NCBI RefSeq assembly: GCF_006345805.1
Contig: NW_021833608.1
Location: 1-61,530 of the forward strand
Direction: 5' to 3'
Length of the DNA: 61,530 nt
Source: Octopus sinensis
Taxonomy: Eukaryota
Positions 14,765 to 51,062 of this stretch are shown here, piece by piece. The first letter of the stretch is position 1, and the number at the start of each line of letters is the position of its first letter. The notes below the pieces were generated by a model, which searched no databases, was not told the origin of the DNA, and worked only from the letters and a program-made list of their open reading frames with translations. The position numbers and the translations under genes are program-made.

Positions 14765-16122
14765 GAGAACACCTGGGGAAGTTTAAGATGTAAGGAAGAA
14801 AATACGGAGCTCCGAAATCTATCCACAAACACCGAAAACAAGGACATCCTATGGAGCCAAATATTTACTAACAAAGAATTGGACTGTATCCGAGTAAGTA
14901 ATACTAATTGAAATTTATTACTATTTTCGAAACGAAATGATGTATTTTGACTCGATATCATCTCCACCTCTAACACAACACATGTAAACATGCGTGGAAC
15001 ATCAAGATCATCCCCGACCTCAAACACCATGTACAAAAGAACTACGAAGTAATTAAATGCCACTGATACTATTCAACCCAAGAATAACAATCGAGCGGTA
15101 CGTACATTAAACTTACAACAAAAAATGCACGAAAAACTACACGTGCGAAATAATGTGACAACAGAAATAAACGGACCGGTACCCTACGAAAATTACGACC
15201 GTCAAAATAATGGGCCGGACGTTGTACCTCATGTCCCGCAAATAAAACCCAAAAGATGTAAATGGACACGTGAGGAATACATTTCTATCTTACACGCATA
15301 CTTCACAGCAATGCTCTACCCAAAAAATGAAAATACAACAACACATACATATAAAATATGGAAGGAAAATAATAGAGATATAGACTTGGATACAGCAATG
15401 AACCCTAATAAATTAGCTAACGTACGAAGATACATTCTCAAAGCCAAAAAAATATCAGAAATAGAAATAGAACATTTAAAAGAAAAAATACACCAGGAAA
15501 ATGTAGATAGAATCCACACAACAATGCCCAATAATATAAACACTGAAACTGTAAAACACGAAGACAAACGCAACATTCCCAACAAACACGATGTAAACAA
15601 CGAAGGGGAGCATAATGATTATGATAATATAAAAAATAAAATAGTCAAAGAACTGAAAACCACAGAGCCCAAAATGGACCACCGACCATACCTCCCAAGA
15701 ATCAAAAGAAATGAAATAACAACACCAATTATAAACAGCATAAACCTAGCCGTCAATGAACTAGCCACTGAAACAAAAAGAAGTGATATCACTGAGCTAA
15801 ATGAATTAATATACGCAGCAGCCACTGCAGCCACAAAAGAAGCTGGATACTCACCCAAACCCGCCCAAACAGGAGTACCACCACCCAAACAAACCCTGTG
15901 GATAAATAACATCCAAAACAAAATAAAAAAATTTAGAAAAGACCTGTCGATTCTTAATGAAATCAGCAAACAATCAACGCTACTGAGCAACAAAAAGAGA
16001 ACGAAAATACTCCGCAAATATAACATTACAGAAAAAGATTTGCCGGAGATAAAAGAAAAGCTGAAGCAAGATATCCTTGCCAAAACACAAAGGATCCGCC
16101 GGTACGAGAAACGCCAACGCTT
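14762..16122 (+). mobile_element. Family B 5' part (5'UTR and N-terminal ORF), 3'-truncated at the polarity switch
   Basis: Collinear with the reverse complement of 54210-55575; ORF 15125-16216 carries KWTREEY..W..NKLANVRRY, the N-terminal domain shared with family A; breaks at ...caacgctt. Confidence 0.9.
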
Positions 16123-16134
16123 ATTATTATTATT

Positions 16135-17386
16135 CAGTAGTTTTATTTTTATTTTTAAAGCGTGCTTTCACTTCACTACCGAGCGCAGCTCTGTGTGCCT
16201 TGGGTATGTGATGTGATTTGTTGTGATGCTCTGATGGTTATTGTGTGGAAAGTGTTCTGCGTAGGATGTGTGCAGTGCCTAGTAGTGCAATTTTCTGTAT
16301 GTTATATGTGTTTGTAAGTCCTGGTGTTTTTGTTATGTATTTGTCTGAATATTTTTTTATCATGCCTAATGCACCTACTATGATAGGAATTGTATCTGTT
16401 TTCAGATTCCACATTCTAGTTACCTCTATTTCCAGGTCTTTGTATTTTGAGAGTTTCTCCATTTCTTTTAGAGACACGTTGTCATCTGCCGGTACTGATA
16501 CATCAATTAGAAAGCATTTTTTTCTTCATGGTCTCTGACAACTATATCTGGTCTGTTGGTCTTAATTTCTCTATCTGTGTGTATCGGCATATCCCAGAGT
16601 ATGGTTGCTTTCTCGTTTTCTGTGACCTTTTCTGGTGTGTGCCTATACCATCTTTTTTCTGTTGTTATTCCATAATGTTGGCATAGCATCCAATGTATGT
16701 AAGTTCCAACTCTGTCATGTCTGTGAATATATTCCTTCTTAGCCAGGACTGGGCAGCTAGAGATAATATGATTTATTGTTTCTTGTCCATCTCCACATAT
16801 TCTGCAGTTACTTGTAATATTTCTTTTCATTACATGTTTTTGGTAATTTCTGGTGGGGAGGCTTTGGTCTTGTGCTGCAATTAAAAATCCCTCTGTTTCT
16901 GCTTTGAGTCCTGAGCGTCTCAACCATTGCTGGGATTTTTCTTTGTCTATTTCTTTTGCGTTTAGTTTAGTCCAGTATTTACCATGAAGGGGCTTTTCTT
17001 GCCATCGTTTTATCATGGTTCGTTGCTGTTCTATTTTTAGTTTGAATTTCATTTTTTTTATAGCTTTTGTTGTTTCTTCATCTTCTTCTTCTTCTTCATG
17101 TTTTTTAGGTGGTATGATTTCTTGTTTGTATTTGTCAGCTTCCTTAAATACTGAGAACAGTTCTTTGTTTTGCTCGTGTTTTTCCGCTATCTGGATCAGT
17201 TTTCCTTCCTTCTGAAGTAGATATTTTTGCAGTCCTATGGTGGTTATTTTATAGTAGTTTTCCAGCTGTATAAGGCCTCTACCACCTTCTATACGTTGTA
17301 TATATAGTCTTTCTATGTCAGATTTTGGGTGATGCATCCTAGATCCTGTCATTATTTTTCTTGTTTTCCTGTCTATTTTGGTCAGT

Positions 17387-21525: not shown

Positions 21526-22755
21526 TATGTTTGACTTTTGCTTTATATTTGTACAAGTTGGCTCCAAGTCTCACCCAGAGACCTCAAGAGACAACAGGTT
21601 GGAAGTTCATGTTGTTCTTATGCCTAGTGTGACATATATTGGGGGGGGGGAGTTATTGGTGTTGTACTAACGAATGTCTAAAAAAAATCTTTTTTTTCTT
21701 TTTAAAACCGGTAATTATGTTTGTATAAACCTTAAGATTACATAGAGAGTATTTTGCGTAGGGTATGAGCAGTTCCCATGAGCACTATCTTTTGAATTTC
21801 TGCCATTTTTGGATTTCCTGGTATCTGAGTTAGGTAGCTATCAGCCCCTTTTGCTATCATTCCCAGCGCACCTATGACAACAGGTATTGTTTTAGTCTTC
21901 AGCTTCCACATTTTGCTGATTTCTATTTCAAGATCTTTATATTTGCTCAGTTTTTGGTAGGTCTTGACAGATACGTTTATATCGATTGGGACTGTCATAT
22001 CAATGAGGAGGTATGTTCTTTGTTTGAAGTCTTTCAATATGATGTCTGGCATATTTGCATCTATCTTCCTTTCAGTTTGAATGGTGAAGTTCCAGAGGAG
22101 TGAGATGTGGTCATTTTGAAGCACTGGGGGTGGTTTGTGTTCCCACCAGTTTTTTTCATGGGCCAAATCCAGGTTTTTACAGATTACCCAGTGAATATAT
22201 TGTGCAGCTCTATCGTGCCTGTTCAGATATTCTGTAGGCGCTAGAAGACTGCACTTGGTGACCACATGGTCAATGGTTTCATTTTGTTGTCGGCATACAC
22301 GACACGTTGGACTGCTTCTGATCTTTAATATGTTGGCTGGTAGTTTCTTGTTGGTAGCCATTGATCTTGAGCTGCTATGTTAAACCCCTCTGTTTCAGAT
22401 TTTAAGCCAGAGGCCATTAGCCATTGATGGATCAGGGCTTTGTCAACATCTGCATTATTTGCTCTCTTTGGGTATTTGCCATAGAGAGGTTTTTCTTGCC
22501 ATTTATCATTCAGAATATCGAAGGCCGCAGATTTAGCACGGGTTTTCATGCGCTTAGCTTTTTCTGTGCCTGTTTCTTGTATGTCTATCTCTAATTCCGA
22601 AATTTGTTATATTCGGAATTCACTTAGATATTCCTTTGCCTGTTTTGTGACTGAGTATGATGCTTTCTTGTTTTCATGTTTTGAGACAAGTTTTAACATC
22701 CAGTCCTCAGAGTTTTTCAGGTGTCTAGGCCAATTGTAGCAATCTTCATTGTTAT
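21525..22755 (-). mobile_element. Family A copy (3'UTR type A1), 5'-truncated
   Basis: ORFs 22325-22549 and 21738-22361; 3'UTR; flanked by (ATT)n. Confidence 0.92.
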
Positions 22756-22777
22756 TATTATTATTATTATTATTATT

Positions 22778-24030
22778 CTATGTTTGACTCTTGCTTTATG
22801 TCTGTACAAGTTGGCTCCAAGTCTCACCCAGAGACCTCAAGAGACAACAGGTTGGAAGTTCCGTGCCGTATATTTGGGGTTTTTTTGGTGTTGTCCTAGT
22901 GAATGTCTAATACATAAAAATAAAATTTTTAAAAAATAAAAATAAAAAAAATAAAATAGAATAAAATAAATAAATAAATAAATTTAAAAAAAGTTTGTTT
23001 TAAACCTTGGGATTACATAGAGAGTATTTTGCGTAGGATATGAGCAGTTCCCATGAGCACTATCTTTTGAATTTCTGCCAATTTGTGGTTTCCTGGTATC
23101 TGAGTTAGGTAGCAATTAGTCCCTTTCGCTATCATTCCCAGGGCACCTATGACAACAGGTATTGTTTTAGTCTTCAGCTTCCACATTTTGCTGATTTCTA
23201 TATCAAGATCTTTATATTTGCTCAGTTTTTGGTAGGTCTTGACAGATACGTTTATATCGATTAGGACAGTCATATCAATGAGGAGGCATGTTCTTTGTTT
23301 GAAGTCTTTCAATATGATGTCTGGCCTATTTGCATCTATCTTCCTGTCAGTTTGAATGGTGAAGTTCCAAAGGAGTGAGATGTGGTCATTTTCAAGCACT
23401 GGAGGTGGATTGTGTTCCCACCAGTTTTTTTCATGGGCCAAATCCAGGTTTTTACAGATTACCCAGTGAATATATTGTGCAGCTCTATCGTGCCTGTTCA
23501 GATATTCTGTAGGCGCTAGAAGACTGCACTTGGTGACCACATGGTCAATGGTTTCATTTTGTTGTCGGCATACACGACACGTTGGACTGCTTCTGATCTT
23601 TAATATGTTGGCTGGTAGTTTCTTGTTGGTAGCCATTGATCTTGAGCTGCTATGTTAAACCCCTCTGTTTCAGATTTTAAGCCAGAGGCCATTAGCCATT
23701 GATGGATCAGGGCTTTGTCAACATCTGCATTATTTGCTCTCTTTGGGTATTTGCCATAGAGAGGTTTTTCTTGCCATTTATCATTCAGAATATCGAAGGC
23801 CGCAGATTTAGCACGGGTTTTCATGCGCTTAGCTTTTTCTGTGCCTGTTTCTTGTATGTCTATCTCTAATTCCGAAATTTGTTATATTCGGAATTCACTT
23901 AGATATTCCTTTGCCTGTTTTGTGACTGAGTATGATGCTTTCTTGTTTTCATGTTTTGAGACAAGTTTTAACATCCAGTCCTCAGAGTTTTCAGGTGTCT
24001 AGGCCAATTGTAGCAATCTTCATTGTTATT
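22778..24030 (-). mobile_element. Family A recombinant copy (3' half like 24052-26305, 5' half like 21525-22755)
   Basis: Diagnostic SNPs switch between 23409 and 23438; same 5' truncation point as the 21525 copy. Confidence 0.88.
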
Positions 24031-24051
24031 ATTATTATTATTATTATTATT

Positions 24052-26301
24052 CTATGTTTGACTCTTGCTTTATGTCTGTACAAGTTGGCTCCAAGTCTCA
24101 CCCAGAGACCTCAAGAGACAACAGGTTGGAAGTTCCGTGCCGTATATTTGGGGTTTTTTTGGTGTTGTCCTAGTGAATGTCTAATACATAAAAATAAAAT
24201 TTTTAAAAAATAAAAATAAAAAAATAAAATAGAATAAAATAAATAAATAAATAAATTTTAAAAAAGTTTGTTTTAAACCTTGGGATTACATAGAGAGTAT
24301 TTTGCGTAGGATATGAGCAGTTCCCATGAGCACTATCTTTTGAATTTCTGCCAATTTGTGGTTTCCTGGTATCTGAGTTAGGTAGCAATTAGTCCCTTTC
24401 GCTATCATTCCCAGGGCACCTATGACAACAGGTATTGTTTTAGTCTTCAGCTTCCACATTTTGCTGATTTCTATATCAAGATCTTTATATTTGCTCAGTT
24501 TTTGGTAGGTCTTGACAGATACGTTTATATCGATTAGGACAGTCATATCAATGAGGAGGCATGTTCTTTGTTTGAAGTCTTTCAATATGATGTCTGGCCT
24601 ATTTGCATCTATCTTCCTGTCAGTTTGAATGGTGAAGTTCCAAAGGAGTGAGATGTGGTCATTTTCAAGCACTGGAGGTGGATTGTGTTCCCACCAGTTT
24701 TTTTCATGGGTCAAATCCAGGTTTTTGCAGATTACCCAGTGAATATATTGTGCAGCTCTATCATGCCTGTTGAAGTACTCTGTAGGTGCTAGAAGACTGC
24801 ATTTGGAGACAACATGATCAATGGTTTCATTTTGTTGTCGGCATACACGGCATGTTGGGCTACAGCCGTTCTTTAATATGTTGGCTGGTAGTTTCTTGTT
24901 GGTAGGCATTGATCTTGAGCTGCTATGATAAACCCCTATGTTTCAGATTTTAAGCCAGAGGCCATTAGCCATTGATGGGTCAGGGCTTTGTCAATATCTA
25001 CATTATTCGCTCTCTTTGGGTATTTGCCATAGAGAGGTTTTTCTTGCCATTTATCATTCAGAATATAGAAGGCCGCAGTTTTGGCACGGGTTTTCATGCG
25101 CTTAGCTTTTTCTGTGCTTGTTTCTTGTATATCTATCTCTAATTCCGAAATTGGTTGTATTCGGAATTCACTTAGATATTCCTTTGCCTGTTTTGTTACT
25201 GAGTATGATGCTTTCTTGTTTTCATGTTTTGAGACAAGTTTTAACATCCAGTCCTCAGTGTTTTTCAGGTAGGTGTCTAGGCCAATTGTAGCAATCTTCA
25301 TTCTTATTGCCAGTTGTAAAAGACCACGGCCTCCCTCTTTTCTTGGCAGATAGAGTCGTTCTGTATCTGCCTTAGGGTGGTGCATTCTATGGATTGTCAA
25401 CAGTTTCCTTATTTTTCTGTCGAGCTGACATTTTTCAGTAATTGACCAGTTAACAATATTGAAACTCTAAGTCACGACTGGTATAGCTAATGCATTGATC
25501 GCTTCGATCCTGTTTCTTGCATTCAGCTCTGTCTTGAGTATTGCTCTCACTCTTCGATAGCATTCTCTCCTGATCCTTTCCTTCATCTCTGAATGCCTTA
25601 TTCCGTTCCCTTCAATTACCCCTAGGTACTTGTAGCTCTCCGCTGGGTCTAGTTCTTTTATGACATTCTGCTTGTCAAGGTTAACGTTAGATGTTTCTGT
25701 CATTTTTCCTTTGATAAAGGTAGCTTTTGCACATTTACCGAGGCCGAATTGCATTCTGATGTCGTCACTGAATTGTTTGACTATCGCTAGTAAGCCCTTG
25801 AGTTGTTGGTCATTTTTTGCAAAAAGCTTTAAATCATCCATGTAAATGAGATGATTTATATTTTTATCGAACATTTTATACCCATACTGCGCATCATTGA
25901 GCAGCTTTGAAAGAGGTAAGGATAAACAAAAGAGGAGTGGTGACAGTGAGTCACCCTGGAACATGCCACACGAAATTTTTACATCACCAGCATTTAGGGA
26001 TTCATTGTCACTGTTCAGAGTTAGTGTGGTTCTCCATGATCTCATACTTACAGTCAAGAAGTTTCGCAGAGTTGGTGCTATCTTATACATTTCCAGGCAT
26101 TTCCTAAACCAGCTATGTGGTAGGCTATCAAAAGCCTTTTTAGAGTCTATCCAGGCTATTGATAAGTTTTTGTGTGGTTTGTGACAATCTTCTAAGATCA
26201 TCTTATTGATGAGTAGTTGGTCTTTACAGTCGTAGGATCCACGTTTACATCCTTTCTGTTCATTATGGAATATGCTGTTGTCTGTTAAAAAACTATAGGT
26301 A

Positions 26302-26305
<4 letters not shown>
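24052..26305 (-). mobile_element. Family A copy (3'UTR type A2), 5'-truncated within RT
   Basis: ORFs 25467-26201, 24936-25400, 24286-24909. Confidence 0.92.
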
Positions 26306-26570
<265 letters not shown>

Positions 26571-28036
26571 CTATGTTTGACTTTTGCTTTATATTTGTAC
26601 AAGTTGGCTCCAAGTCTCACCCAGAGACCTCAAGAGACAACAGGGTTGGAAGTTCATGTTATACTCAGTAACAAAACAGGCAAAGGAATATCTAAGTGAA
26701 TTCCGAATACAACAAATTTCGGAATTAGAGATAGACATACAAGAAACAGGCACAGAAAAAGCTAAGCGCATGAAAACCCGTGCTAAATCTGCGGCCTTAG
26801 ATATTCTGAATGATAAATGGAAAGAAAAACCTCTCTAAGGCAAATACCCAAAGAGAGCAAATAATGCAGATGTTGACAAAGCCCTGACCCATCAATGGCT
26901 AATGGCCTCTGGCTTAAAATCTGAAACAGAGGGGTTTATCATAGCAGCTCAAGATCAATGCCTACCAACAAGAAACTACCAGGCCAACATATTAAGATCA
27001 GAAGCAGTCCAACGTGTCGTGTATGCAAGCAACAAAATGAAACCATTGACCATGTGGTCTCCAAGTGCAGTCTTCTAGCGCCTACAGAGTATCTCAACAG
27101 GCACGATAGAGCTGCACAATATATTCGCTGGGTAATCTGTAAAAACCTGGATTTGCCCCATGAAAAAAACTGGTGGGAACACAAACCACCCCCAGTGCTT
27201 GAAAATGACCACATCTCACTCCTCTGGAACTTCGCCATTCAAACTGACAGAAAGATAGATGCAAATAGGCCAGACATCATATTGAAAGACTTCAAACAAA
27301 GAACATGCCTCCTCATTGATATGACTGTCCCAATCGATATAAACGTATCTGTCAAGACCTACCAAAAACTGAGCAAATATAAAGATCTTGAAATAGAAAT
27401 CAGCAAAATGTGGAAGCTGAAGACTAAAACAATACCTGTTGTCATAGGTGCCCTGAGAATGATAGCAAAAGGGGCAGATAGCTACCTAACTCAGATACCA
27501 GGAAACCCAAAAATGGCAGAAATTCAAAAGATAGTGCTCATGGGAACTGCTCATATCCTACGCAAAATACTTTCTATGTAATCTCAAGGTTTAAAACAAA
27601 CATAATTTTCGGTTTAAAAAAAAAAAAAAAAAATATTATTATTATATTATTATTATTATTATATTATTATTATTATTATATTATTATCATTATTATATTA
27701 TTATTATTATTATTATCATTATTATCATTATTATTATTATCATTATTATTATATCATTATTATCATTATTATTATTATTATATTATTATTATTATTATTA
27801 TTATCATTATTATTATTATTATTATTCAGTAGTTTTATTTTTATAGCGTGCTTTCACATCACTACCGAGCGCAGTTCTGTGTTCCTTGGGTATGTGCTGT
27901 GATTGTTGTGATGCTCTGATGGTTATTGTATGGAAAGTGTTCTGCGTAGGATGTGTGCAGTGCCTAGTAGTGCAATTTTCTGTATGTTATATGTGTTTGT
28001 AAGTCCTGGTGATTTTGTTATGTATTTGTCTGAATA

Positions 28037-28103
<67 letters not shown>

Positions 28104-42200: not shown

Positions 42201-43002
42201 TGTAGTTCTGTTGGGTCAATATTTGTGTGACTTTCTTTATCTATTTGATGCTCATCTGTCTTAGTGTTTATGATTGGTTCAGGGAGTATTTCACTTTGCC
42301 TATCACTTATACTAACTCTTTCAATCCTCACTTCGTTTTTATCAGCCCTGGGCTGGTCTATAATTATTTCCTCTGCATTATCTTCTCTAGCTGCAGCTTC
42401 GTTCATTTTATCCGATATTGCTTGTCTAACTTGATCAATCTCTACTTCAGTCAGTAATTTTTTTTTTATAATGTTTCTTCTGACGTTGGCAAGTTTGTTA
42501 CTGTCTATGTAGGGTCTTACTTTAGGGTGTTTCTGTCTCCAGTTTAAGTATGCTTGTACAGTGTTAGATTTATCTGTGGGGAAATATATGGCATGGTAGA
42601 AGGCCTCAAGAACTTCTTTATTATCTTCCCTAGACCATTTTTCCTTCTTTTTCTTTTGATTATTTGGTGATGAGCATGGATGGTCATCTGTTGAAATATT
42701 CCGGTTGTGGGGTACGTCCAGCTCCTGTGTGTTGGGAAGATTTGATCCAGTAGCTGATTTTTCAATCAGAATTTGGTTCAATTTTCGGGTACGTGGTCTT
42801 TTGTAATCCGCGCAACGACCAATGCGGCTTATTGTTTGATTTGTTGGCCTTGAAGCACGACGAGCTTCCATTCTTATATTAGGAGATGGATCTGTCAGTT
42901 TATGGTTCACTACATGTAAGCATTGCTCATAGCGCCGCTTCTTAAGACTAGCAGATCTATATTCGTCTGTATTTTTTTGTTGATAGTTTTATCTCCGAAC
43001 AT
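39268..43002 (-). pseudogene. Family A polyprotein (Myb-like N-terminus, RT, CCHC, RLE), disrupted
   Basis: KWSREDNKEVLEAFY..W..NKLANVRR, RT motifs, YMDD; ~79-bp deletion at ~39924 and a 1-bp loss at ~39685 break the C-terminus; likely start ATG at 43002 needs A7 to be A8 at 42972-42978. Confidence 0.85.
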
Positions 43003-43040
43003 TTTTTTCCCCCTCTTCCTTTCTTCAAGTCTCACTCTGC

Positions 43041-43807
43041 CTGTATTAGTTCGAAATAATGAGAATAAAATACGGAGAAGGAAAAGAAAAAAAGGGAAAA
43101 AGACGGGATCTGTTAGTTATTACTGTTATTACTATCACCTTCACCACCATCACCATAATCAGCAACATCACCATCACCATCATCAGCAACATCACCATCA
43201 CCATCATCATCATCAATGACATTGTTTTATATGTAGCCACAGCCAATATCAACACTCCTACTGTCATTGTGTGGGAGAATGGTTGGTTAAAGAATTCATG
43301 TTCTTTGGGTCTATAAATAGATTCGGCCGATGGTGGAGACAAAGGACGTTAATGGTCAGTAAAAAGTCAAGCTTGTTTACATTTATTTATTTATTTATTT
43401 ATTTATTTTTTCTTTCTCTTTTCTTCCTCTCCACAAACATATGTATATGTATACTCACTCACACATATTATCTGATATTTACGTCGATGATTTTTTTTAA
43501 TAAAAAACTTTCTGAGTTCAATGTTATGTATATATTTTAAAAATTTCTGAATTTAGTTGTATGTATATATTAGTAGGTGCTTAATTCCATAACTTTTTAT
43601 CGTGCATTTAATTGTGTTGTTACAATAAAAGGTAATTTAAAAGGCAATTTTACACATTCTTATAGTCATGAGAGACGACTAAATGTAAATGTTCACACAG
43701 AATTGGAGATATTTATGTTTCTAATTTTTCTTGTTAGGTGCACGTTTGTATGAGCTGTAAATATGTAAGTTTTTTAACTTATTTTGAGGGAAATTCAAAT
43801 TACTCAC
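43041..43807 (-). other. Putative spliceosomal intron in the family A 5' leader
   Basis: Donor GTGAGT (43807-43802), AT-rich body, branch-like ACTAAC (43117-43112), long pyrimidine tract (43107-43074), acceptor TACAG|G (AG at 43042-43041). Confidence 0.55.
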
Positions 43808-43898
43808 AGAAAACAGTAGATCTTCCAGTTTTCTACAGTTGTTTTTTTACCGTTGTCCTGCTGGGTTCGCTGTTGCCAGTTCAGAGCATCGTAAAAAT

Positions 43899-43931
43899 AC
43901 GTCCATCGCCTGTCACGTCCAGCCGCCTTCC
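43899..43931 (-). promoter_or_regulatory. Putative internal Pol II promoter (DPE-like GGACGT at +12 and +28)
   Basis: GGAAGGCGGCTGGACGTGACAGGCGATGGACGT directly after (AAT)n; the second GGACGT sits at +28..+33 from the first non-repeat base. Confidence 0.45.
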
Positions 43932-43971
43932 ATTATTATTATTATAATTATTATTATTATTATTATTATTA

Positions 43972-44008
<37 letters not shown>

Positions 44009-44023
44009 TATTATTATTATCAC

Positions 44024-44069
<46 letters not shown>

Positions 44070-44111
44070 TTATTATTATTATTATATTATTATTATATTA
44101 TTATTATTATT

Positions 44112-46922
44112 CTATGTTTGACTTTTGCTTTATGTCTGTACAAGTTGGCTCCAAGTCTCACCCAGAGACCTCAAGAGACAACAGCTTGGAAGTTCTGTGC
44201 CATATATTGGGGTTTTTTTTTTTTTTGGTGTTGTACTAGTGAATGTCTAATACATAAAAATAATAAATGAATAAATTAATTTTAAAAAATAAATAAATAA
44301 AAATAAAAAAATTAAAAAAATTTTTTAAAATAAAGAAATAAAATAAAATAAAATAAAATAAAATTAAAAAAAATTTAAATAAATAAACAAAAAAGTTTGT
44401 TTTAAACCTTGGGATTACATAGAGAGTATTTTGCGTAGGATATGAGCAGTTCCCATGAGCACTGTCTTTTGAATTTCTGCCATTTTGGGGTTTCCTGGTA
44501 TCTGAGTTAGGTAGCAATGAGTCCCTTTCGCTATCATTCCCAGGGCACCTATGACAACAGGTATTGTTTTAGTCTTCAGCTTCCACATTTTGCTGATTTC
44601 TATTTCAAGATCTTTATACTTGCTCAGTTTTTTGGTAGGTCTTGACAGACACGTTTATATCGATTGGGACAGTCATATCAATGAGGAGGCATTTTCTTTG
44701 TCTGAAGTCTTTCAATATAATGTCTGGCCTATTTGCATCTATCTTCCTGTCAGTTTGAATGGTGAAGTTCCAGAGGAGTGAGATGTGGTCATTTTCAAGC
44801 ACTGGAGGTGGATTGTGTTTCCACCAGTTTTTTTCATGGGGCAAATCCAGGTTTTTGCAAATTACGCAGTGAATATATTGTGCAGCTCTATCATGCCTGT
44901 TGAGGTACTCTGTAGGCGCTAGAAGACTGCATTTGGAGACAACATGGTCAATGGTTTCATTTTGTTGTCGGCATACACGACATGTTGGGCTACTGCTGTT
45001 CTTTAATATGTTGGCCTGGTAGTTTCTTGTTGGTAGGCATTGATCTTGAGCTGCTATGATAAACCTCTCTGTTTCAGATTTTAAGCCAGAGGCCATTAGC
45101 CATTGATGGGTCAGGGCTTTGTCGATATCTGCATTATTCGCTCTCTTTGGGTATTTGCCATAGAGAGGATTTTCTTGCCATTTATTATTCAGAATATCTA
45201 AGGCCGCAGTTTTGGCACGGGTTTTCATGCGCCTAGCTTTTTCTGCGCTTGTTTCTTGTATATCTCTCTCTAATTCCGAAATTGGTTGTATTCGGAATTC
45301 ACTTAGATATTCCTTTGCCTGTTTTGTGACTGAGTATGATGCTTTCTTGTTTTCATGTTTTGAGACAAGTTTTAACATCCAGTCCTCAGAGTTTTTCAGG
45401 TAGGTGTCTAGGCCAATTGTAGCAATCTTCATTGATATTGCCAGTTGCAAAAGACCACGGCCTCCCTCTTTTCTTGGCAGATAGAGTCGTTCTGTATCTG
45501 CCTTAGGGTGGTGCATTCTATGCATTGTCCACAGTTTGCTTATTTTTCTGTCGAGCTGACATATTTCAGTAATTGACCAGTTAACAATATTGAAACTGTA
45601 AGTCACGACTGGTATGGCTAATGCATTGATCGCTTCGATCCTGTTTCTTGCATTCAGCTCTGTCTTGAGTATTGCTCTCACTCCTCGATAGCATTCTCTC
45701 CTGATCCTTTCCTTCATCTCTGAGTGCCTTATTCCGTTCCCTTTAATTACCCCTAGGTACTTGCAGCTCTCCGCTGGGTCTAGTTCTTTTATGACATTCT
45801 GCTGGTCAAGGTTAACGTTAGATGTTTCTGTCATTTTCCCTTTGATGAAGGTAGCTTTTGCACATTTATCGAGGCCGAATTGCATTCTGATGTCGTCACT
45901 GAATTGTTTGACTATCGCTAGTAAGCCCTTGAGTTGTTGGTCATTTTTTGCAAAAAGCTTTAAATCATCCATGTAAATGAGATGATTTATATTTTTATCA
46001 AACATTTTATACCCGTACTGCGCGTCATTGAGCAGCTTTGAGAGAGGTATTAAGGATAAACAAAAGAGGAGTGGTGACAGTGAGTCACCCTGGAAAATGC
46101 TACACGAAATTTTTACATCACCAGTATTTAGGGATTCATTGTCACTGTTCAGAGTTAGTGTGGTTCTCCATGATCTCATACTTACAGTCAAGAAGTTTCG
46201 CAGAGTAGGTGCTATCTAATACATTTCTAGGCATTTCCTAATCCAGCTATGTGGTAGGCTATCAAAAGCCTTTTTATAGTCTATCCAGGCTATTGATAAG
46301 TTTTTGTGTGGTTTGTGACAATCTTCTAAGATCATCTTATTGATGAGTAGTTGGTCTTTACAGTCGTAGGATCCACGTTTACATCCTTTCTGTTCATTAT
46401 GGAATATGCTGCTGTCTGTTAAAAAACTATAGGTATATTCCGTCAGGACAGATGTTAGTGTTTTGTACATAGTTGTTAAGCAGGTTATGGGTCTATAGTT
46501 TTTTGGTTCATTTGTTTCTTCGCTTTTTGGAAGAAGGAATGTTAACCCATTAACTAGCCAAGGAGGCATCCTACAAGGGTGTTGCAAAACATCATTGTAC
46601 AGTTCCGTTAGCAGTTCATGGCTCTCTGGGAAGTCATTCAGCCAGAAGTTAGGAATTTTATCCTTTCCTGGAGACTTCCATTTGCTTGACCTCCTGAGAG
46701 CAGATCTTATATCTTCTACCTTGACACCCTCCCACTTTTGCTCTTCTAAGGGGTCCAGTTCTGTAGATAATCTTTCAATCGTTGTGCGTTTTTTCTTCTG
46801 CCCATATTTTATTCAAAAATCCCTGCACTTCTTCTTTAGATGGTACAGACCTTGCAGTAAACACTGTTTTTCCTATCTTCCTGTAAAAATTCTTGGTGTT
46901 ATTTTTGAACATGTTGTTGTCC
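44112..46922 (-). mobile_element. Family A copy (A2 3'UTR), 5'-truncated ~2.8 kb
   Basis: ORFs 46216-46587, 44614-46191; expanded AT-rich 3'UTR spacer. Confidence 0.92.
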
Positions 46923-49988: not shown

Positions 49989-50174
49989 AAGATGGTGAGC
50001 TGGTGGAATCGTTAGCACGCTGGACGAAGTGCTGAGCTGCAACTGCATTTCACCCATCACTACCTTCTGAATTCAAATTCCTGTTCGGATGAAATGAGTA
50101 TCTGCGGTGCATTGGGGTTGATGTGAACTAATTGCCCTTCGACACAATTTCAGGCCTTGTGCCTAGAGTACAAA
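49989..50174 (+). mobile_element. SINE family S
   Basis: Paralog of 37545-37730. Confidence 0.8.
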
Positions 50175-50244
50175 TGATTATTATTATTATTATTATTATC
50201 ATCAATATCATTATCATTTAAATTATCATTATCATTATCATTAA

Positions 50245-50286
<42 letters not shown>

Positions 50287-50350: not shown

Positions 50351-50536
50351 AAGATGGTGAGCTCGCGGAATCGTTAGCACGCTGGACGAAGTGCTGAGCT
50401 GCAACTGCATTTCACCCATCACTACCTTCTGAATTCAAATTCTTGTTCGGATGAAATGATTATCTGCGGAGCATTAGGGTCGACGCGATCTAATTGCCCC
50501 TCGGCACATTTTTAGGCCTTGTGCCTAGAGTACAAA
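50351..50536 (+). mobile_element. SINE family S
   Basis: Same motifs; positional paralog of 38126-38302. Confidence 0.8.
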
Positions 50537-50543
50537 TTATTAA

Positions 50544-50642
<99 letters not shown>

Positions 50643-50946: not shown

Positions 50947-51062
50947 ATTATTATTATTATTATTATTTTTTTTTTTTCAATTTTTCAATCATCATCATCA
51001 TCATCATCATCATCATTACCATTATTATTATTATTATTATATTATTATCATTATTATTATTA

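What the first reader, a model, noticed from the sequence alone, without database searches (positions are those of the whole stretch)
43002..43931. Canonical spliceosomal intron in the 5' leader of an R4/Dong-type retrotransposon
Seen on the minus strand, upstream of the only full-length family A ORF: 124-nt exon-like block from the (AAT)n junction, GTGAGT donor (43807), ~767 nt of AT-rich sequence with microsatellites and upstream ATGs, ACTAAC branch motif (43117-43112), ~35-nt pyrimidine tract, no further AG until TACAG|G (43041), then an ATG 38 nt into exon 2 (43002) that joins the long ORF if the A7 at 42972-42978 is A8. Established: retrotransposed copies normally lose introns; introns retained in retroelements are known mainly from Penelope-like and LTR elements that use unspliced RNA as template. 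Inference: this element may splice for translation but retrotranspose unspliced RNA, or it captured a host exon-intron-exon leader. I know of no such report for R4/Dong elements, but have not been able to check the literature.
Basis: partly seen in the sequence, partly recalled or inferred. Interest (0 to 1): 0.82.

Follow-up and report, generated by a model that had tools for sequence, protein, structure and literature searches.

The report
Intron-like insert in retrotransposon leader
A dead copy of a (TAA)n-targeting Dong-type jumping gene has a 5' leader about four to seven times longer than its relatives' leaders, because of a 767-base AT-rich stretch bracketed by textbook splice signals, but nothing available here can show that it is ever spliced or that other copies share it.

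Summary
The element is a restriction-like-endonuclease (RLE) non-LTR retrotransposon that targets (TAA)n, so the R4/Dong-type call holds.

Three corrections:
- The copy is not intact. It lacks 79 nt at 39924, which cuts off the CCHC/endonuclease domain.
- The conserved start codon is ATG 42871, by alignment to three relatives. The ATG at 43002 and the A7-to-A8 repair are not needed.
- ACTAAC lies in a 9-nt tandem duplication at the end of a (GAT/GGT)n minisatellite.

The intron itself cannot be tested. Region 42507-43931 is single-copy in the window, and no copy was found in any collection.

Relatives with recoverable 5' ends have short, intronless leaders of 142, about 195 and about 230-255 nt. 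A's leader is 1060 nt unspliced and 293 nt if spliced. So the 767 nt is an addition specific to the A lineage or to this copy.

Donor-acceptor pairs of this quality occur three times in 123 kb. A second family shares GTRAGTAAT at the same leader position but has no acceptor before its start codon.

Verdict: partly supported. The segment is plausibly spliceable, but it is unproven as an intron.

The parts
43932..44111 (-). (AAT)n target microsatellite abutting the element's 5' end. It is also the 3' tail or target of the upstream 5'-truncated family A copy.
   Evidence: period 3, 61 copies
43808..43931 (-). 5'-terminal leader block ('exon 1'): 124 nt, GC 48%, starts GGAAGGCGG, two GGACGT motifs at 43920 and 43904, two upstream ATGs.
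   Evidence: The G-rich start next to (AAT)n matches the 5' ends of family B, L006/L010 and L007.
43802..43807 (-). GTGAGT donor-like site, extended GTGAGTAAT.
   Evidence: GT[AG]AGTAAT occurs only here and in the two family B leaders across both strands of the window.
43041..43807 (-). 767-nt AT-rich (GC 30%) intron-like segment. It holds 22 ATGs, small tandem duplications and microsatellites, and has no homolog elsewhere.
43382..43407 (-). (AAAT)n giving six overlapping sense-strand AATAAA poly(A)-signal hexamers inside the segment.
43112..43245 (-). (GAT/GGT)n minisatellite (24-nt higher-order unit) ending in a 9-nt tandem duplication, AGTAATAAC x2, that contains the ACTAAC 'branch' motif.
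   Evidence: Similar (GAT)n blocks lie within (AAT)n arrays at 26342-26490 and inside the leader of relative L007.
43074..43103 (-). 30-nt pure pyrimidine run.
   Evidence: Pairing with the downstream purine run is no better than shuffles.
43041..43043 (-). CAG acceptor-like site followed by G, preceded by 69 nt free of AG. Nearer branch candidates are CTCAT (A at 43060) and TTTAT (A at 43066).
42872..43040 (-). Remaining leader ('exon 2' up to the conserved start), 169 nt with four upstream ATGs, including the ATG at 43002.
42869..42871 (-). Conserved initiation codon (MEARRASRPTNQTISRIGR...).
   Evidence: Alignment to the N-termini of P0001, P0008 and P0026.
39923..42868 (-). Main ORF: divergent Myb-like motif (KWSREDNKEVLEAFY...W), then RT (Pfam RVT_1 at residues 568-823 of the 1021-residue open frame). 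It ends prematurely at the deletion point.
39924..39925 (-). Site of a 79-nt deletion relative to six other family A copies. It shifts the frame and creates the stop.
   Evidence: The uninterrupted homologous ORF in L003/P0004 spans this point.
39271..39922 (-). Remnant coding sequence for the C-terminal CCHC zinc motif and the restriction-like endonuclease (RPD...D...K). It is now out of frame.
38981..39270 (-). 3' UTR (about 200 nt, ending ...GCAAAAGTCAAACATAG) followed by (AAT)n.
55437..55601 (-). Comparator: family B copy 1 leader start, with a 19-nt GGGGACGTAAGGAGAACA repeat and GTAAGT at 55442-55437. The probable start ATG at 55346 is 96 nt further on, with no AG in between.
14762..14899 (+). 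Comparator: family B copy 2 leader start, with GTAAGT at 14894-14899.

Best explanation
Region 43931-39068 (minus strand) is one copy of a (TAA)n-specific, R4/Dong-type non-LTR retrotransposon. It is 5'-complete but dead.

Its leader runs from the (AAT)n junction at 43931 to the conserved start codon at 42871, 1060 nt in all. Related families have leaders of 142-255 nt.

The excess is a discrete 767-nt AT-rich, microsatellite-laden segment (43807-43041). This segment is specific to the A lineage or to this copy. It is not an ancestral feature of the clade.

The segment is bracketed by a consensus GTGAGT donor and by a pyrimidine-tract/CAG|G acceptor with a long AG-free zone. If this copy or its master were transcribed from the 5' end, the spliceosome would most likely recognise and remove it. 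The result would be a 293-nt leader, within reach of the relatives' sizes, that has lost 22 upstream ATGs and six AATAAA signals.

Shown: the anatomy, the family assignment, the correct start codon, the deletion, the leader lengths of relatives, and the background frequency of comparable signals.

Inferred: that the 5' block and the ORF belong to one element, and that the segment can be spliced.

Not shown: any splicing, or the presence of the segment in other copies.
For: - Motifs are at the stated coordinates.
- GC content steps from 48% to 30% to 38% exactly at the proposed junctions.
- The 5' block abuts (AAT)n with the same G-rich TG|GG start as families B, L006/L010 and L007, and GGACGT motifs cluster there as in B.
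- No Dong-type ORF remnant lies downstream of A's 3' end, as a nested-insertion model would require.
- L007 shows that a (GAT/GGT/AAT)n array can sit inside a Dong-type leader.
- The start codon at 42871 is conserved in three relatives.
- Relatives' leaders are 142 nt (two independent contigs), about 195 nt and 228-255 nt. None has a leader intron.
- A comparable donor-acceptor pair is expected in only about 2% of 1-kb segments.
- The spliced leader would be 293 nt and would lose 22 of 28 upstream ATGs and all six AATAAA signals.
- The ORF is otherwise intact over 1021 codons, so the copy is young. That makes slow in-situ accretion of 767 nt of complex sequence unlikely.
Against: - Region 42507-43931 is single-copy in the window and has no match anywhere else searched, so there is no conservation evidence at all.
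- Two other donor-acceptor pairs of equal quality occur by chance in the same window.
- ACTAAC is a by-product of a 9-nt duplication.
- The pure pyrimidine run ends 33 nt before the AG, so the branch-to-AG distance would be 72 nt if ACTAAC were used.
- The spliced leader still carries six upstream ATGs.
- In family B the shared GTRAGTAAT cannot be a leader-intron donor, because no AG precedes the start codon.
- General knowledge of L1 (PMC5860796): spliced LINE RNAs are themselves retrotransposed. An efficiently spliced intron should therefore be lost quickly unless unspliced RNA is the preferred template.
- The copy is defective, so its leader may not represent the active master element.
Confidence: 0.4

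Rival explanations
1. The extra DNA is passive: either a copy-specific insertion or simply a long unspliced leader. In this reading the 767 nt is non-functional DNA, either acquired by this copy or carried by the family as part of a long 5' UTR. The splice-like signals are fortuitous products of AT-rich, low-complexity sequence. The element is never spliced there.
For: - Two other equally good donor-acceptor pairs arise by chance in the window.
- The pyrimidine run, (AAAT)n, (GAT/GGT)n and the 9-nt duplication are all low-complexity features typical of this window.
- ACTAAC is explained by the duplication.
- Relatives have no leader intron.
- The copy is already damaged by a 79-nt deletion.
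- The window is a highly rearranged repeat array.
Against: - There are no target-site duplications, terminal inverted repeats or TE homology around the segment.
- The otherwise intact 1021-codon ORF argues that the copy is young.
- The signals sit exactly at the GC-content steps, and removing the segment restores a leader of near-typical length.
- An unspliced leader with 28 upstream ATGs and six AATAAA signals would be a poor mRNA and a poor full-length template.
Confidence: 0.35
2. Two elements are juxtaposed. In this reading family A's real 5' end is near 43111, just after the degenerate GTAATAACAGTAATAACTAAC and (GAT/GGT)n array, which would be a decayed target microsatellite. That gives a leader of about 240 nt. 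Region 43246-43931 would be the orphaned 5' leader of another Dong-type element.
For: - (GAT)n blocks are part of the target arrays directly 5' of another truncated copy.
- A 240-nt leader would match family B's 228-255 nt.
Against: - Non-LTR copies are truncated at the 5' end, not the 3' end, so an orphan 5' leader needs an extra deletion event.
- No remainder of such an element lies beyond A's 3' end.
- The sequence at 43111 (AGATCCCG...) lacks the G-rich start seen at all other Dong-type 5' ends, whereas 43931 has it.
- L007 shows the same kind of microsatellite inside a single leader.
- The end of the block resembles no Dong 3' terminus.
Confidence: 0.1
3. The GTRAGTAAT motif about 125-160 nt into the leader is a conserved U1 snRNP-binding element, not a splice donor. 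It would be shared by Dong-type families A and B and would suppress premature polyadenylation or aid export. A's downstream acceptor would be incidental.
For: - GT[AG]AGTAAT and ACTGTnTnCn(n)GTRAGT occur only in the A and B leaders in 123 kb, at +125, +133 and +160.
- In B no acceptor exists before the start codon.
- A's segment contains six AATAAA signals that would need suppression.
Against: - The A and B leaders do not align above shuffles, even locally around the motif, and the motif was chosen after seeing both.
- The L006/L010 and L007 leaders have no such motif.
Confidence: 0.1

Closest known systems
R4/Dong clade of restriction-like-endonuclease non-LTR retrotransposons (Dong of Bombyx mori; Dong-like elements of insects, molluscs, cnidarians and ostracods; PMC7998251)
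   Same: - Single ORF with a central RT and a C-terminal CCHC plus PD..D..K endonuclease.
- Insertion into (TAA)n, with head-to-tail arrays of 5'-truncated copies.
- No N-terminal zinc fingers, and a divergent Myb-like W...W motif near the N-terminus.
   Different: This copy's leader is 1060 nt and carries an intron-like 767-nt segment. Relatives recovered here have 142-255-nt leaders without one. My searches found no report of an intron in this clade, but the literature search was limited.
Penelope (Penelope-like elements) leader intron (PMC2377424; Arkhipova et al. 2003, cited there)
   Same: A spliceosomal intron lies in the 5' leader close to the transcription start. In Penelope it is 75 bp long and sits 46 bp downstream of the start. 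It is retained through retrotransposition, and the spliced form is needed for expression.
   Different: Penelope-like elements have a telomerase-like RT and a GIY-YIG endonuclease. Here the enzyme is R2-like with an RLE. Penelope's intron is experimentally spliced and its splice sites are conserved between species. Here nothing of that kind is shown, and the segment is ten times longer.
Human LINE-1 5'UTR splice sites and SpIREs (PMC5860796)
   Same: It is a non-LTR element whose 5' UTR contains functional splice donor and acceptor sites, so the idea of splice signals in a LINE leader has precedent.
   Different: L1 is an APE-type, two-ORF element. Its splicing is a harmful side reaction, and spliced copies are evolutionary dead ends that lose promoter elements. 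Here exon 1 would be retained, and no spliced copies are known.
R2 elements (solved structures 9nl3, 9dou, 8gh6)
   Same: They are the closest proteins with solved structures. The alignment covers the RT, the CCHC motif and the RLE (E about 1e-29).
   Different: R2 targets 28S rDNA, has N-terminal zinc fingers, is co-transcribed with rRNA and is released by an HDV-like ribozyme. No ribozyme was detected here, and the target is (TAA)n.

Membership tests
R4/Dong-type RLE non-LTR retrotransposon | Central reverse transcriptase domain in a single long ORF | tested here: met
   Pfam RVT_1, E 2.9e-25, residues 568-823 of the open frame. The best PDB hits are R2 proteins.
R4/Dong-type RLE non-LTR retrotransposon | C-terminal CCHC zinc motif followed by a PD-(D/E)xK restriction-like endonuclease | tested here: met
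   CRVC...H...C and RPD...D...K are read in other family A copies. The homologous region of P0004 aligns to the R2 CCHC/RLE. In this copy the domain is out of frame because of the 79-nt deletion.
R4/Dong-type RLE non-LTR retrotransposon | Site-specific insertion into (TAA)n microsatellite (Dong) or rDNA (R4) | tested here: met
   All copies in the window and all relatives in L002-L010 are flanked by (AAT)n at their 5' and/or 3' ends.
R4/Dong-type RLE non-LTR retrotransposon | Divergent N-terminal Myb/SANT-like domain without zinc fingers (PMC7998251) | tested here: inconclusive
   The motif K(K/R)xKW(S/T)REExxxV...F/Y...W...NKLANVRR is conserved among A, B, P0001, P0008 and P0026. Pfam gives no hit even at E<=5. 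The published detection needed HHpred.
R4/Dong-type RLE non-LTR retrotransposon | Phylogenetic placement of the RT with reference Dong/R4 sequences | not tested
   No named Dong/R4 reference sequences were retrievable with these tools.
U2-type spliceosomal intron | GT donor matching the GTRAGT consensus | tested here: met
   GTGAGT at 43807-43802.
U2-type spliceosomal intron | Branch site, pyrimidine tract and YAG acceptor in the usual arrangement | tested here: met
   CAG|G at 43041, 74% pyrimidines at positions -40 to -3, and 69 nt free of AG. The spacing is atypical: the pure 30-nt run ends 33 nt before the AG. Branch candidates lie at -72 (ACTAAC), -25 and -19.
U2-type spliceosomal intron | Removal from RNA (spliced cDNA or reads, or intron-less retrocopies) | not testable with these tools
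   There are no transcript data. The host genome is absent from all collections.
U2-type spliceosomal intron | Splice sites conserved among copies or related families while the interior diverges | tested here: inconclusive
   No second copy of 42507-43931 exists in the data. Relatives L006/L010 and L007 have no leader intron. Family B shares GTRAGTAAT at the same position but has no acceptor before its start codon.
Penelope-like elements (intron-retaining retroelements) | Telomerase-like RT with a GIY-YIG endonuclease | tested here: not met
   The RT and endonuclease are R2-like/RLE. Any resemblance concerns only how the leader might work.
HDV-like ribozyme-processed 5' ends (R2 and related elements) | Self-cleaving ribozyme fold at the element's 5' end | tested here: not met
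   No Rfam family reaches gathering score in the whole window. In 42700-44300 there are only chance-level hits with E above 0.7.

The most novel reading that the evidence does not exclude
Family A Dong-type elements of this host maintain a genuine spliceosomal intron in their 5' leader. The spliced RNA, with a 293-nt leader cleared of 22 upstream ATGs and six poly(A) signals, would serve as mRNA. Unspliced RNA would be the template for target-primed reverse transcription, so the intron would be inherited. This is the Penelope strategy arising independently in an R2-like, RLE-bearing LINE. The GTRAGTAAT motif shared with family B would be its evolutionary seed.
Probability: 0.15. Interest if true: 0.7.

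Novelty: new variant of a known kind. Interest (0 to 1): 0.35.

Why it matters
Retrotransposed copies normally shed introns. Stable introns in retroelements are known mainly from Penelope-like elements.

A maintained leader intron in an R2-like, site-specific LINE would show that the strategy of splicing for translation while copying unspliced RNA evolved more than once. It would also raise the question of how such an element separates its mRNA pool from its template pool despite cis-preference.

If the segment is instead copy-specific junk, the locus is an ordinary dead Dong-type insertion in a (TAA)n array. In that case its only lesson is that consensus splice signals arise easily in AT-rich repeats.

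Tried and rejected
- **HDV-like or other ribozyme at the 5' end:** no Rfam hit.
- **Pyrimidine tract as one arm of a functional hairpin with the downstream purine run:** the fold is no better than dinucleotide shuffles, z = -1.3.
- **ATG 43002 with an A7-to-A8 repair as the start codon:** rejected, because P0001, P0008 and P0026 all begin at a Met that aligns with ATG 42871.
- **Sequence homology of A's leader to the leaders of B, L001, L006 or L007:** no alignment beats shuffles. Only the motif-level resemblance remains.
- **A about 700-nt insertion in A relative to B, anchored on TATTTCGAAC:** not significant.
- **Nested non-autonomous Dong-derived element:** the end of the block resembles no Dong 3' terminus, and there are no target-site duplications or terminal inverted repeats.
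- **Hidden coding or TE homology in the segment:** blastn and tblastx against the window and ten related loci found only microsatellite matches.
- **Finding other family A 5' ends:** nothing came from two protein searches, an exact-protein look-up, protein-pattern scans of the viral, metagenome and genome collections, or exact DNA scans.
- one tblastn run used only the C-terminal part of the query because of a slicing error. It was redone with the full query.
Full report
**1. What is in the sequence**

Read on the minus strand, a long (AAT)n tract ends at 43932. A 124-nt, 48%-GC block follows at 43931-43808, then GTGAGT at 43807-43802. After that comes 767 nt of 30%-GC sequence.

This sequence contains:
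- an (AAAT)n run, which gives six overlapping AATAAA hexamers at 43407-43382;
- small tandem duplications;
- a (GAT/GGT)n minisatellite at 43136-43212;
- a 9-nt tandem duplication at 43116-43133 that contains ACTAAC.

A pure 30-nt pyrimidine run lies at 43103-43074. It is followed by 33 nt of mixed sequence and then TACAG|G, with the G at 43041.

The long ORF frame is open from 42988, the ATG at 43002 is in another frame, and one extra A at 42972-42978 would join them.

**2. What the element is**

The ORF carries a Pfam RVT_1 domain. Six other family A copies in the window have 79 nt that this copy lacks, exactly where its ORF stops at 39924.

With those bases the ORF continues for about 245 more residues. 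That extension runs through a CRVC...H...C motif and an RPD...D...K restriction-like endonuclease (RLE) signature. A relative from a metagenome (P0004 on L003, 61% identical) has this whole region as one uninterrupted ORF. Its best matches among solved structures are R2 retrotransposon proteins, and the alignment covers the RT, the CCHC motif and the endonuclease.

Every copy in the window and every relative fetched is flanked by (AAT)n. Other family A copies form head-to-tail arrays of 5'-truncated units.

These are the defining features of R4/Dong-type elements as summarised in PMC7998251. The N-terminal Myb-like motif is visible and conserved in alignments, but Pfam does not detect it. No named reference sequences were available for a phylogeny.

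**3. The start codon**

Three independent relatives begin with a Met that lies 9-12 residues before a conserved RIGR motif:
- P0001: MQTRSKT..IGR
- P0008: MKSRTRNNSCRIGR
- P0026: M..MSSNEKTYRIGR

This Met aligns with A's in-frame MEARRASRPTNQTISRIGR at 42871. The ATG at 43002 and the proposed A7-to-A8 repair are therefore unnecessary. That ATG is simply one of several upstream ATGs. The leader is 1060 nt unspliced, or 124 + 169 = 293 nt if 43807-43041 were removed.

**4. Can conservation be tested?**

It cannot be tested with these data. Within the window nothing matches 42507-43931 except microsatellite fragments. The longest other family A copy starts at the equivalent of 42506.

Outside the window I found nothing:
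- The protein database holds no family A protein. The best identities are 38-62%.
- An exact-protein look-up failed.
- Protein-pattern scans of the viral, metagenome and genome collections were empty.
- Exact DNA scans with exon-1 sequences were empty.

The host genome is evidently not in the searchable collections.

**5. Leaders of related families**

This was the most informative comparison available.

- **L006 and L010.** These are two independent contigs of one family, one of them 977 kb long. Both read (AAT)n | GGGCATGG... and reach the conserved ATG after 142 nt, with no GTRAGT and no insert. L009 is the same leader, 5'-truncated against (AAT)n.
- **L007.** Its leader of about 195 nt is homologous to L006's. 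A degenerate (GAT/GGT/AAT)n array sits inside it, between the conserved 5' part and the ATG.
- **Family B.** This family is in the window itself, with protein 25-43% identical to A. Two copies keep their 5' ends, at 55601 (minus strand) and 14762 (plus strand). Their leaders are about 255 and 228 nt to the probable start, MRGTSRSSPTPN.

All of these 5' ends begin with a G-rich TG|GG-type sequence next to (AAT)n, as does 43931. Five of the nine GGACGT hexamers in the window lie in the first 45 nt of A and B1.

I take this as good evidence for two points. First, 43931 is a genuine Dong-type 5' terminus. Second, the 767-nt segment is an addition in the A lineage or in this copy, not an ancestral feature of the clade.

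**6. The shared donor-like motif**

GT[AG]AGTAAT occurs only three times on both strands of the window, at A 43807, B1 55442 and B2 14894. These lie 125, 160 and 133 nt into their leaders. The longer pattern ACTGTnTnCn(n)GTRAGT is found nowhere else.

This is suggestive, but I weight it lightly for three reasons:
- I chose the motif after seeing both sequences.
- The A and B leaders do not align above shuffles, even locally.
- In both B copies there is no AG at all in the 96 nt between GTAAGT and the probable start codon. In B the motif therefore cannot be the donor of a leader-only intron.

It may be chance, or it may be a U1-binding element with another role.

**7. Are the signals more than chance?**

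The window has 45 GT[AG]AGT sites on its two strands. Six YAG acceptors have at least the observed pyrimidine content and AG-free distance. Three strong donor-to-acceptor pairs lie within 1.5 kb of each other, including this one.

That is roughly 2% for a given 1-kb segment. The combination is notable for this particular leader but not exceptional for a scan of the whole window.

The architecture is also slightly atypical. If ACTAAC were the branch site, it would lie 72 nt from the AG. It owes its existence to a tandem duplication. Nearer yUnAy candidates exist at -19 and -25.

In favour of a discrete unit, GC content steps exactly at both junctions. Removal would also delete 22 of 28 upstream ATGs and all six AATAAA hexamers.

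**8. Alternatives considered**

- **Two juxtaposed elements, with A's real 5' end near 43111.** I raised this because (GAT)n blocks are part of the target arrays elsewhere. It is weakened in four ways: L007 provides a precedent for such an array inside one leader; 43111 lacks a G-rich start; no orphan element remainder lies beyond A's 3' end; and LINE copies are truncated at the 5' end, not the 3' end.
- **A nested transposon or non-autonomous Dong derivative.** This finds no support: there are no target-site duplications or terminal inverted repeats, no resemblance to Dong 3' termini, and no homology anywhere.
- **Slow in-situ growth.** This is unlikely because the 1021-codon frame is otherwise intact, so the copy is young.
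- **A ribozyme or a hairpin as the reason for the pyrimidine tract.** Both were rejected.

**9. Most likely mechanism and confidence**

I think the most likely reading (about 0.4) has three parts:
- This is one Dong-type copy.
- Its leader carries a lineage-specific 767-nt segment.
- The spliceosome would recognise that segment if the leader is transcribed.

Almost as likely (about 0.35), the segment is passive DNA with fortuitous signals and is never spliced. Juxtaposition of two elements and a non-splicing U1-site role share most of the rest.

There is a general argument against a stably maintained, efficiently spliced intron. Spliced LINE RNAs are themselves retrotransposed, as in human L1 SpIREs, where splicing is deleterious (PMC5860796).

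Penelope shows the opposite is possible. It has a 75-bp intron 46 bp downstream of the transcription start, which is spliced in most transcripts and is required for expression (PMC2377424).

**10. Novelty and verdict**

Splice signals in retroelement leaders are known from L1 and from Penelope-like elements. My limited searches found no report for R4/Dong-type elements. If the segment is a real intron, this would be a new variant of a known kind and moderately surprising to specialists.

As it stands, the evidence is one defective copy with no transcript data and no second copy. The decisive tests are a survey of family A 5' ends in the host genome and a search for split reads across 43808|43040. 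Both are simple but lie outside these tools.

Noticed in passing
window 39924 (minus strand), compared with 2775-2854, 25021-24942, 45152-45073, 48083-48005, 26846-26925 and 22473-22394: The 'full-length' family A copy lacks 79 nt that six other copies have. The deletion creates the stop codon and separates the RT from the CCHC/endonuclease domain.
   Followed up: yes
window 55601-51700 (minus strand) and 14762-16216 (plus strand): A second Dong-like family (B), 25-43% identical to A in protein. Two copies keep their 5' ends. Copy B1 has 2.5 tandem copies of a 19-nt unit (GGGGACGTAAGGAGAACA) at its extreme 5' end, which copy B2 lacks.
   Followed up: partly
window 26600-34650: A composite block is tandemly repeated five times, with periods of about 1.55 kb and then about 1.75 kb. 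Each unit is a short minus-strand A 3' fragment, then a plus-strand 5'-truncated A copy, then (in the last three units) an inverted A fragment. This indicates segmental duplication after insertion.
   Followed up: no
window 21558-26305 (minus strand): A head-to-tail array of three 5'-truncated family A copies, separated by spacers of about 55 nt. This is the pattern expected from successive insertions into each other's (TAA)n tails.
   Followed up: no
window 5100-14760: Nearly pure (AAT)n over almost 10 kb (GC 7-8% at 6-10 kb), interrupted by fragments of Dong-like C-terminal coding sequence, for example at 11229-11726.
   Followed up: no
window 26342-26500 and 50990-51020: (GAT)n blocks with occasional GGT are embedded in the (AAT)n arrays. 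The same repeat type occurs inside A's leader and inside L007's leader.
   Followed up: partly
window 56616-59720 (minus strand); also 38800-38989, 56337-56526, 50357-50627, 49995-50271, 37556-37824 and 38128-38396: An unrelated APE-type LINE with apurinic/apyrimidinic endonuclease and RT domains. A segment of about 190-270 nt next to (AAT)n is repeated at least six times and may be this or another element's 3' tail.
   Followed up: no
L006 250-672: The relative's locus shows the same architecture: (AAT)n, a heavily 5'-truncated Dong-like 3' end, (AAT)n, then a full-length element. Tandem stacking in (TAA)n is therefore general for this group.
   Followed up: partly
P0002: One of the few database hits to the A protein is a partial reverse transcriptase annotated from the microsporidian Hamiltosporidium magnivora (24% identity).
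   Followed up: no
window 42988-42872 (minus strand): The ORF frame stays open for 39 codons upstream of the conserved ATG. This may be chance (roughly a 5-10% expectation in this composition) or a remnant of an N-terminal extension.
   Followed up: partly
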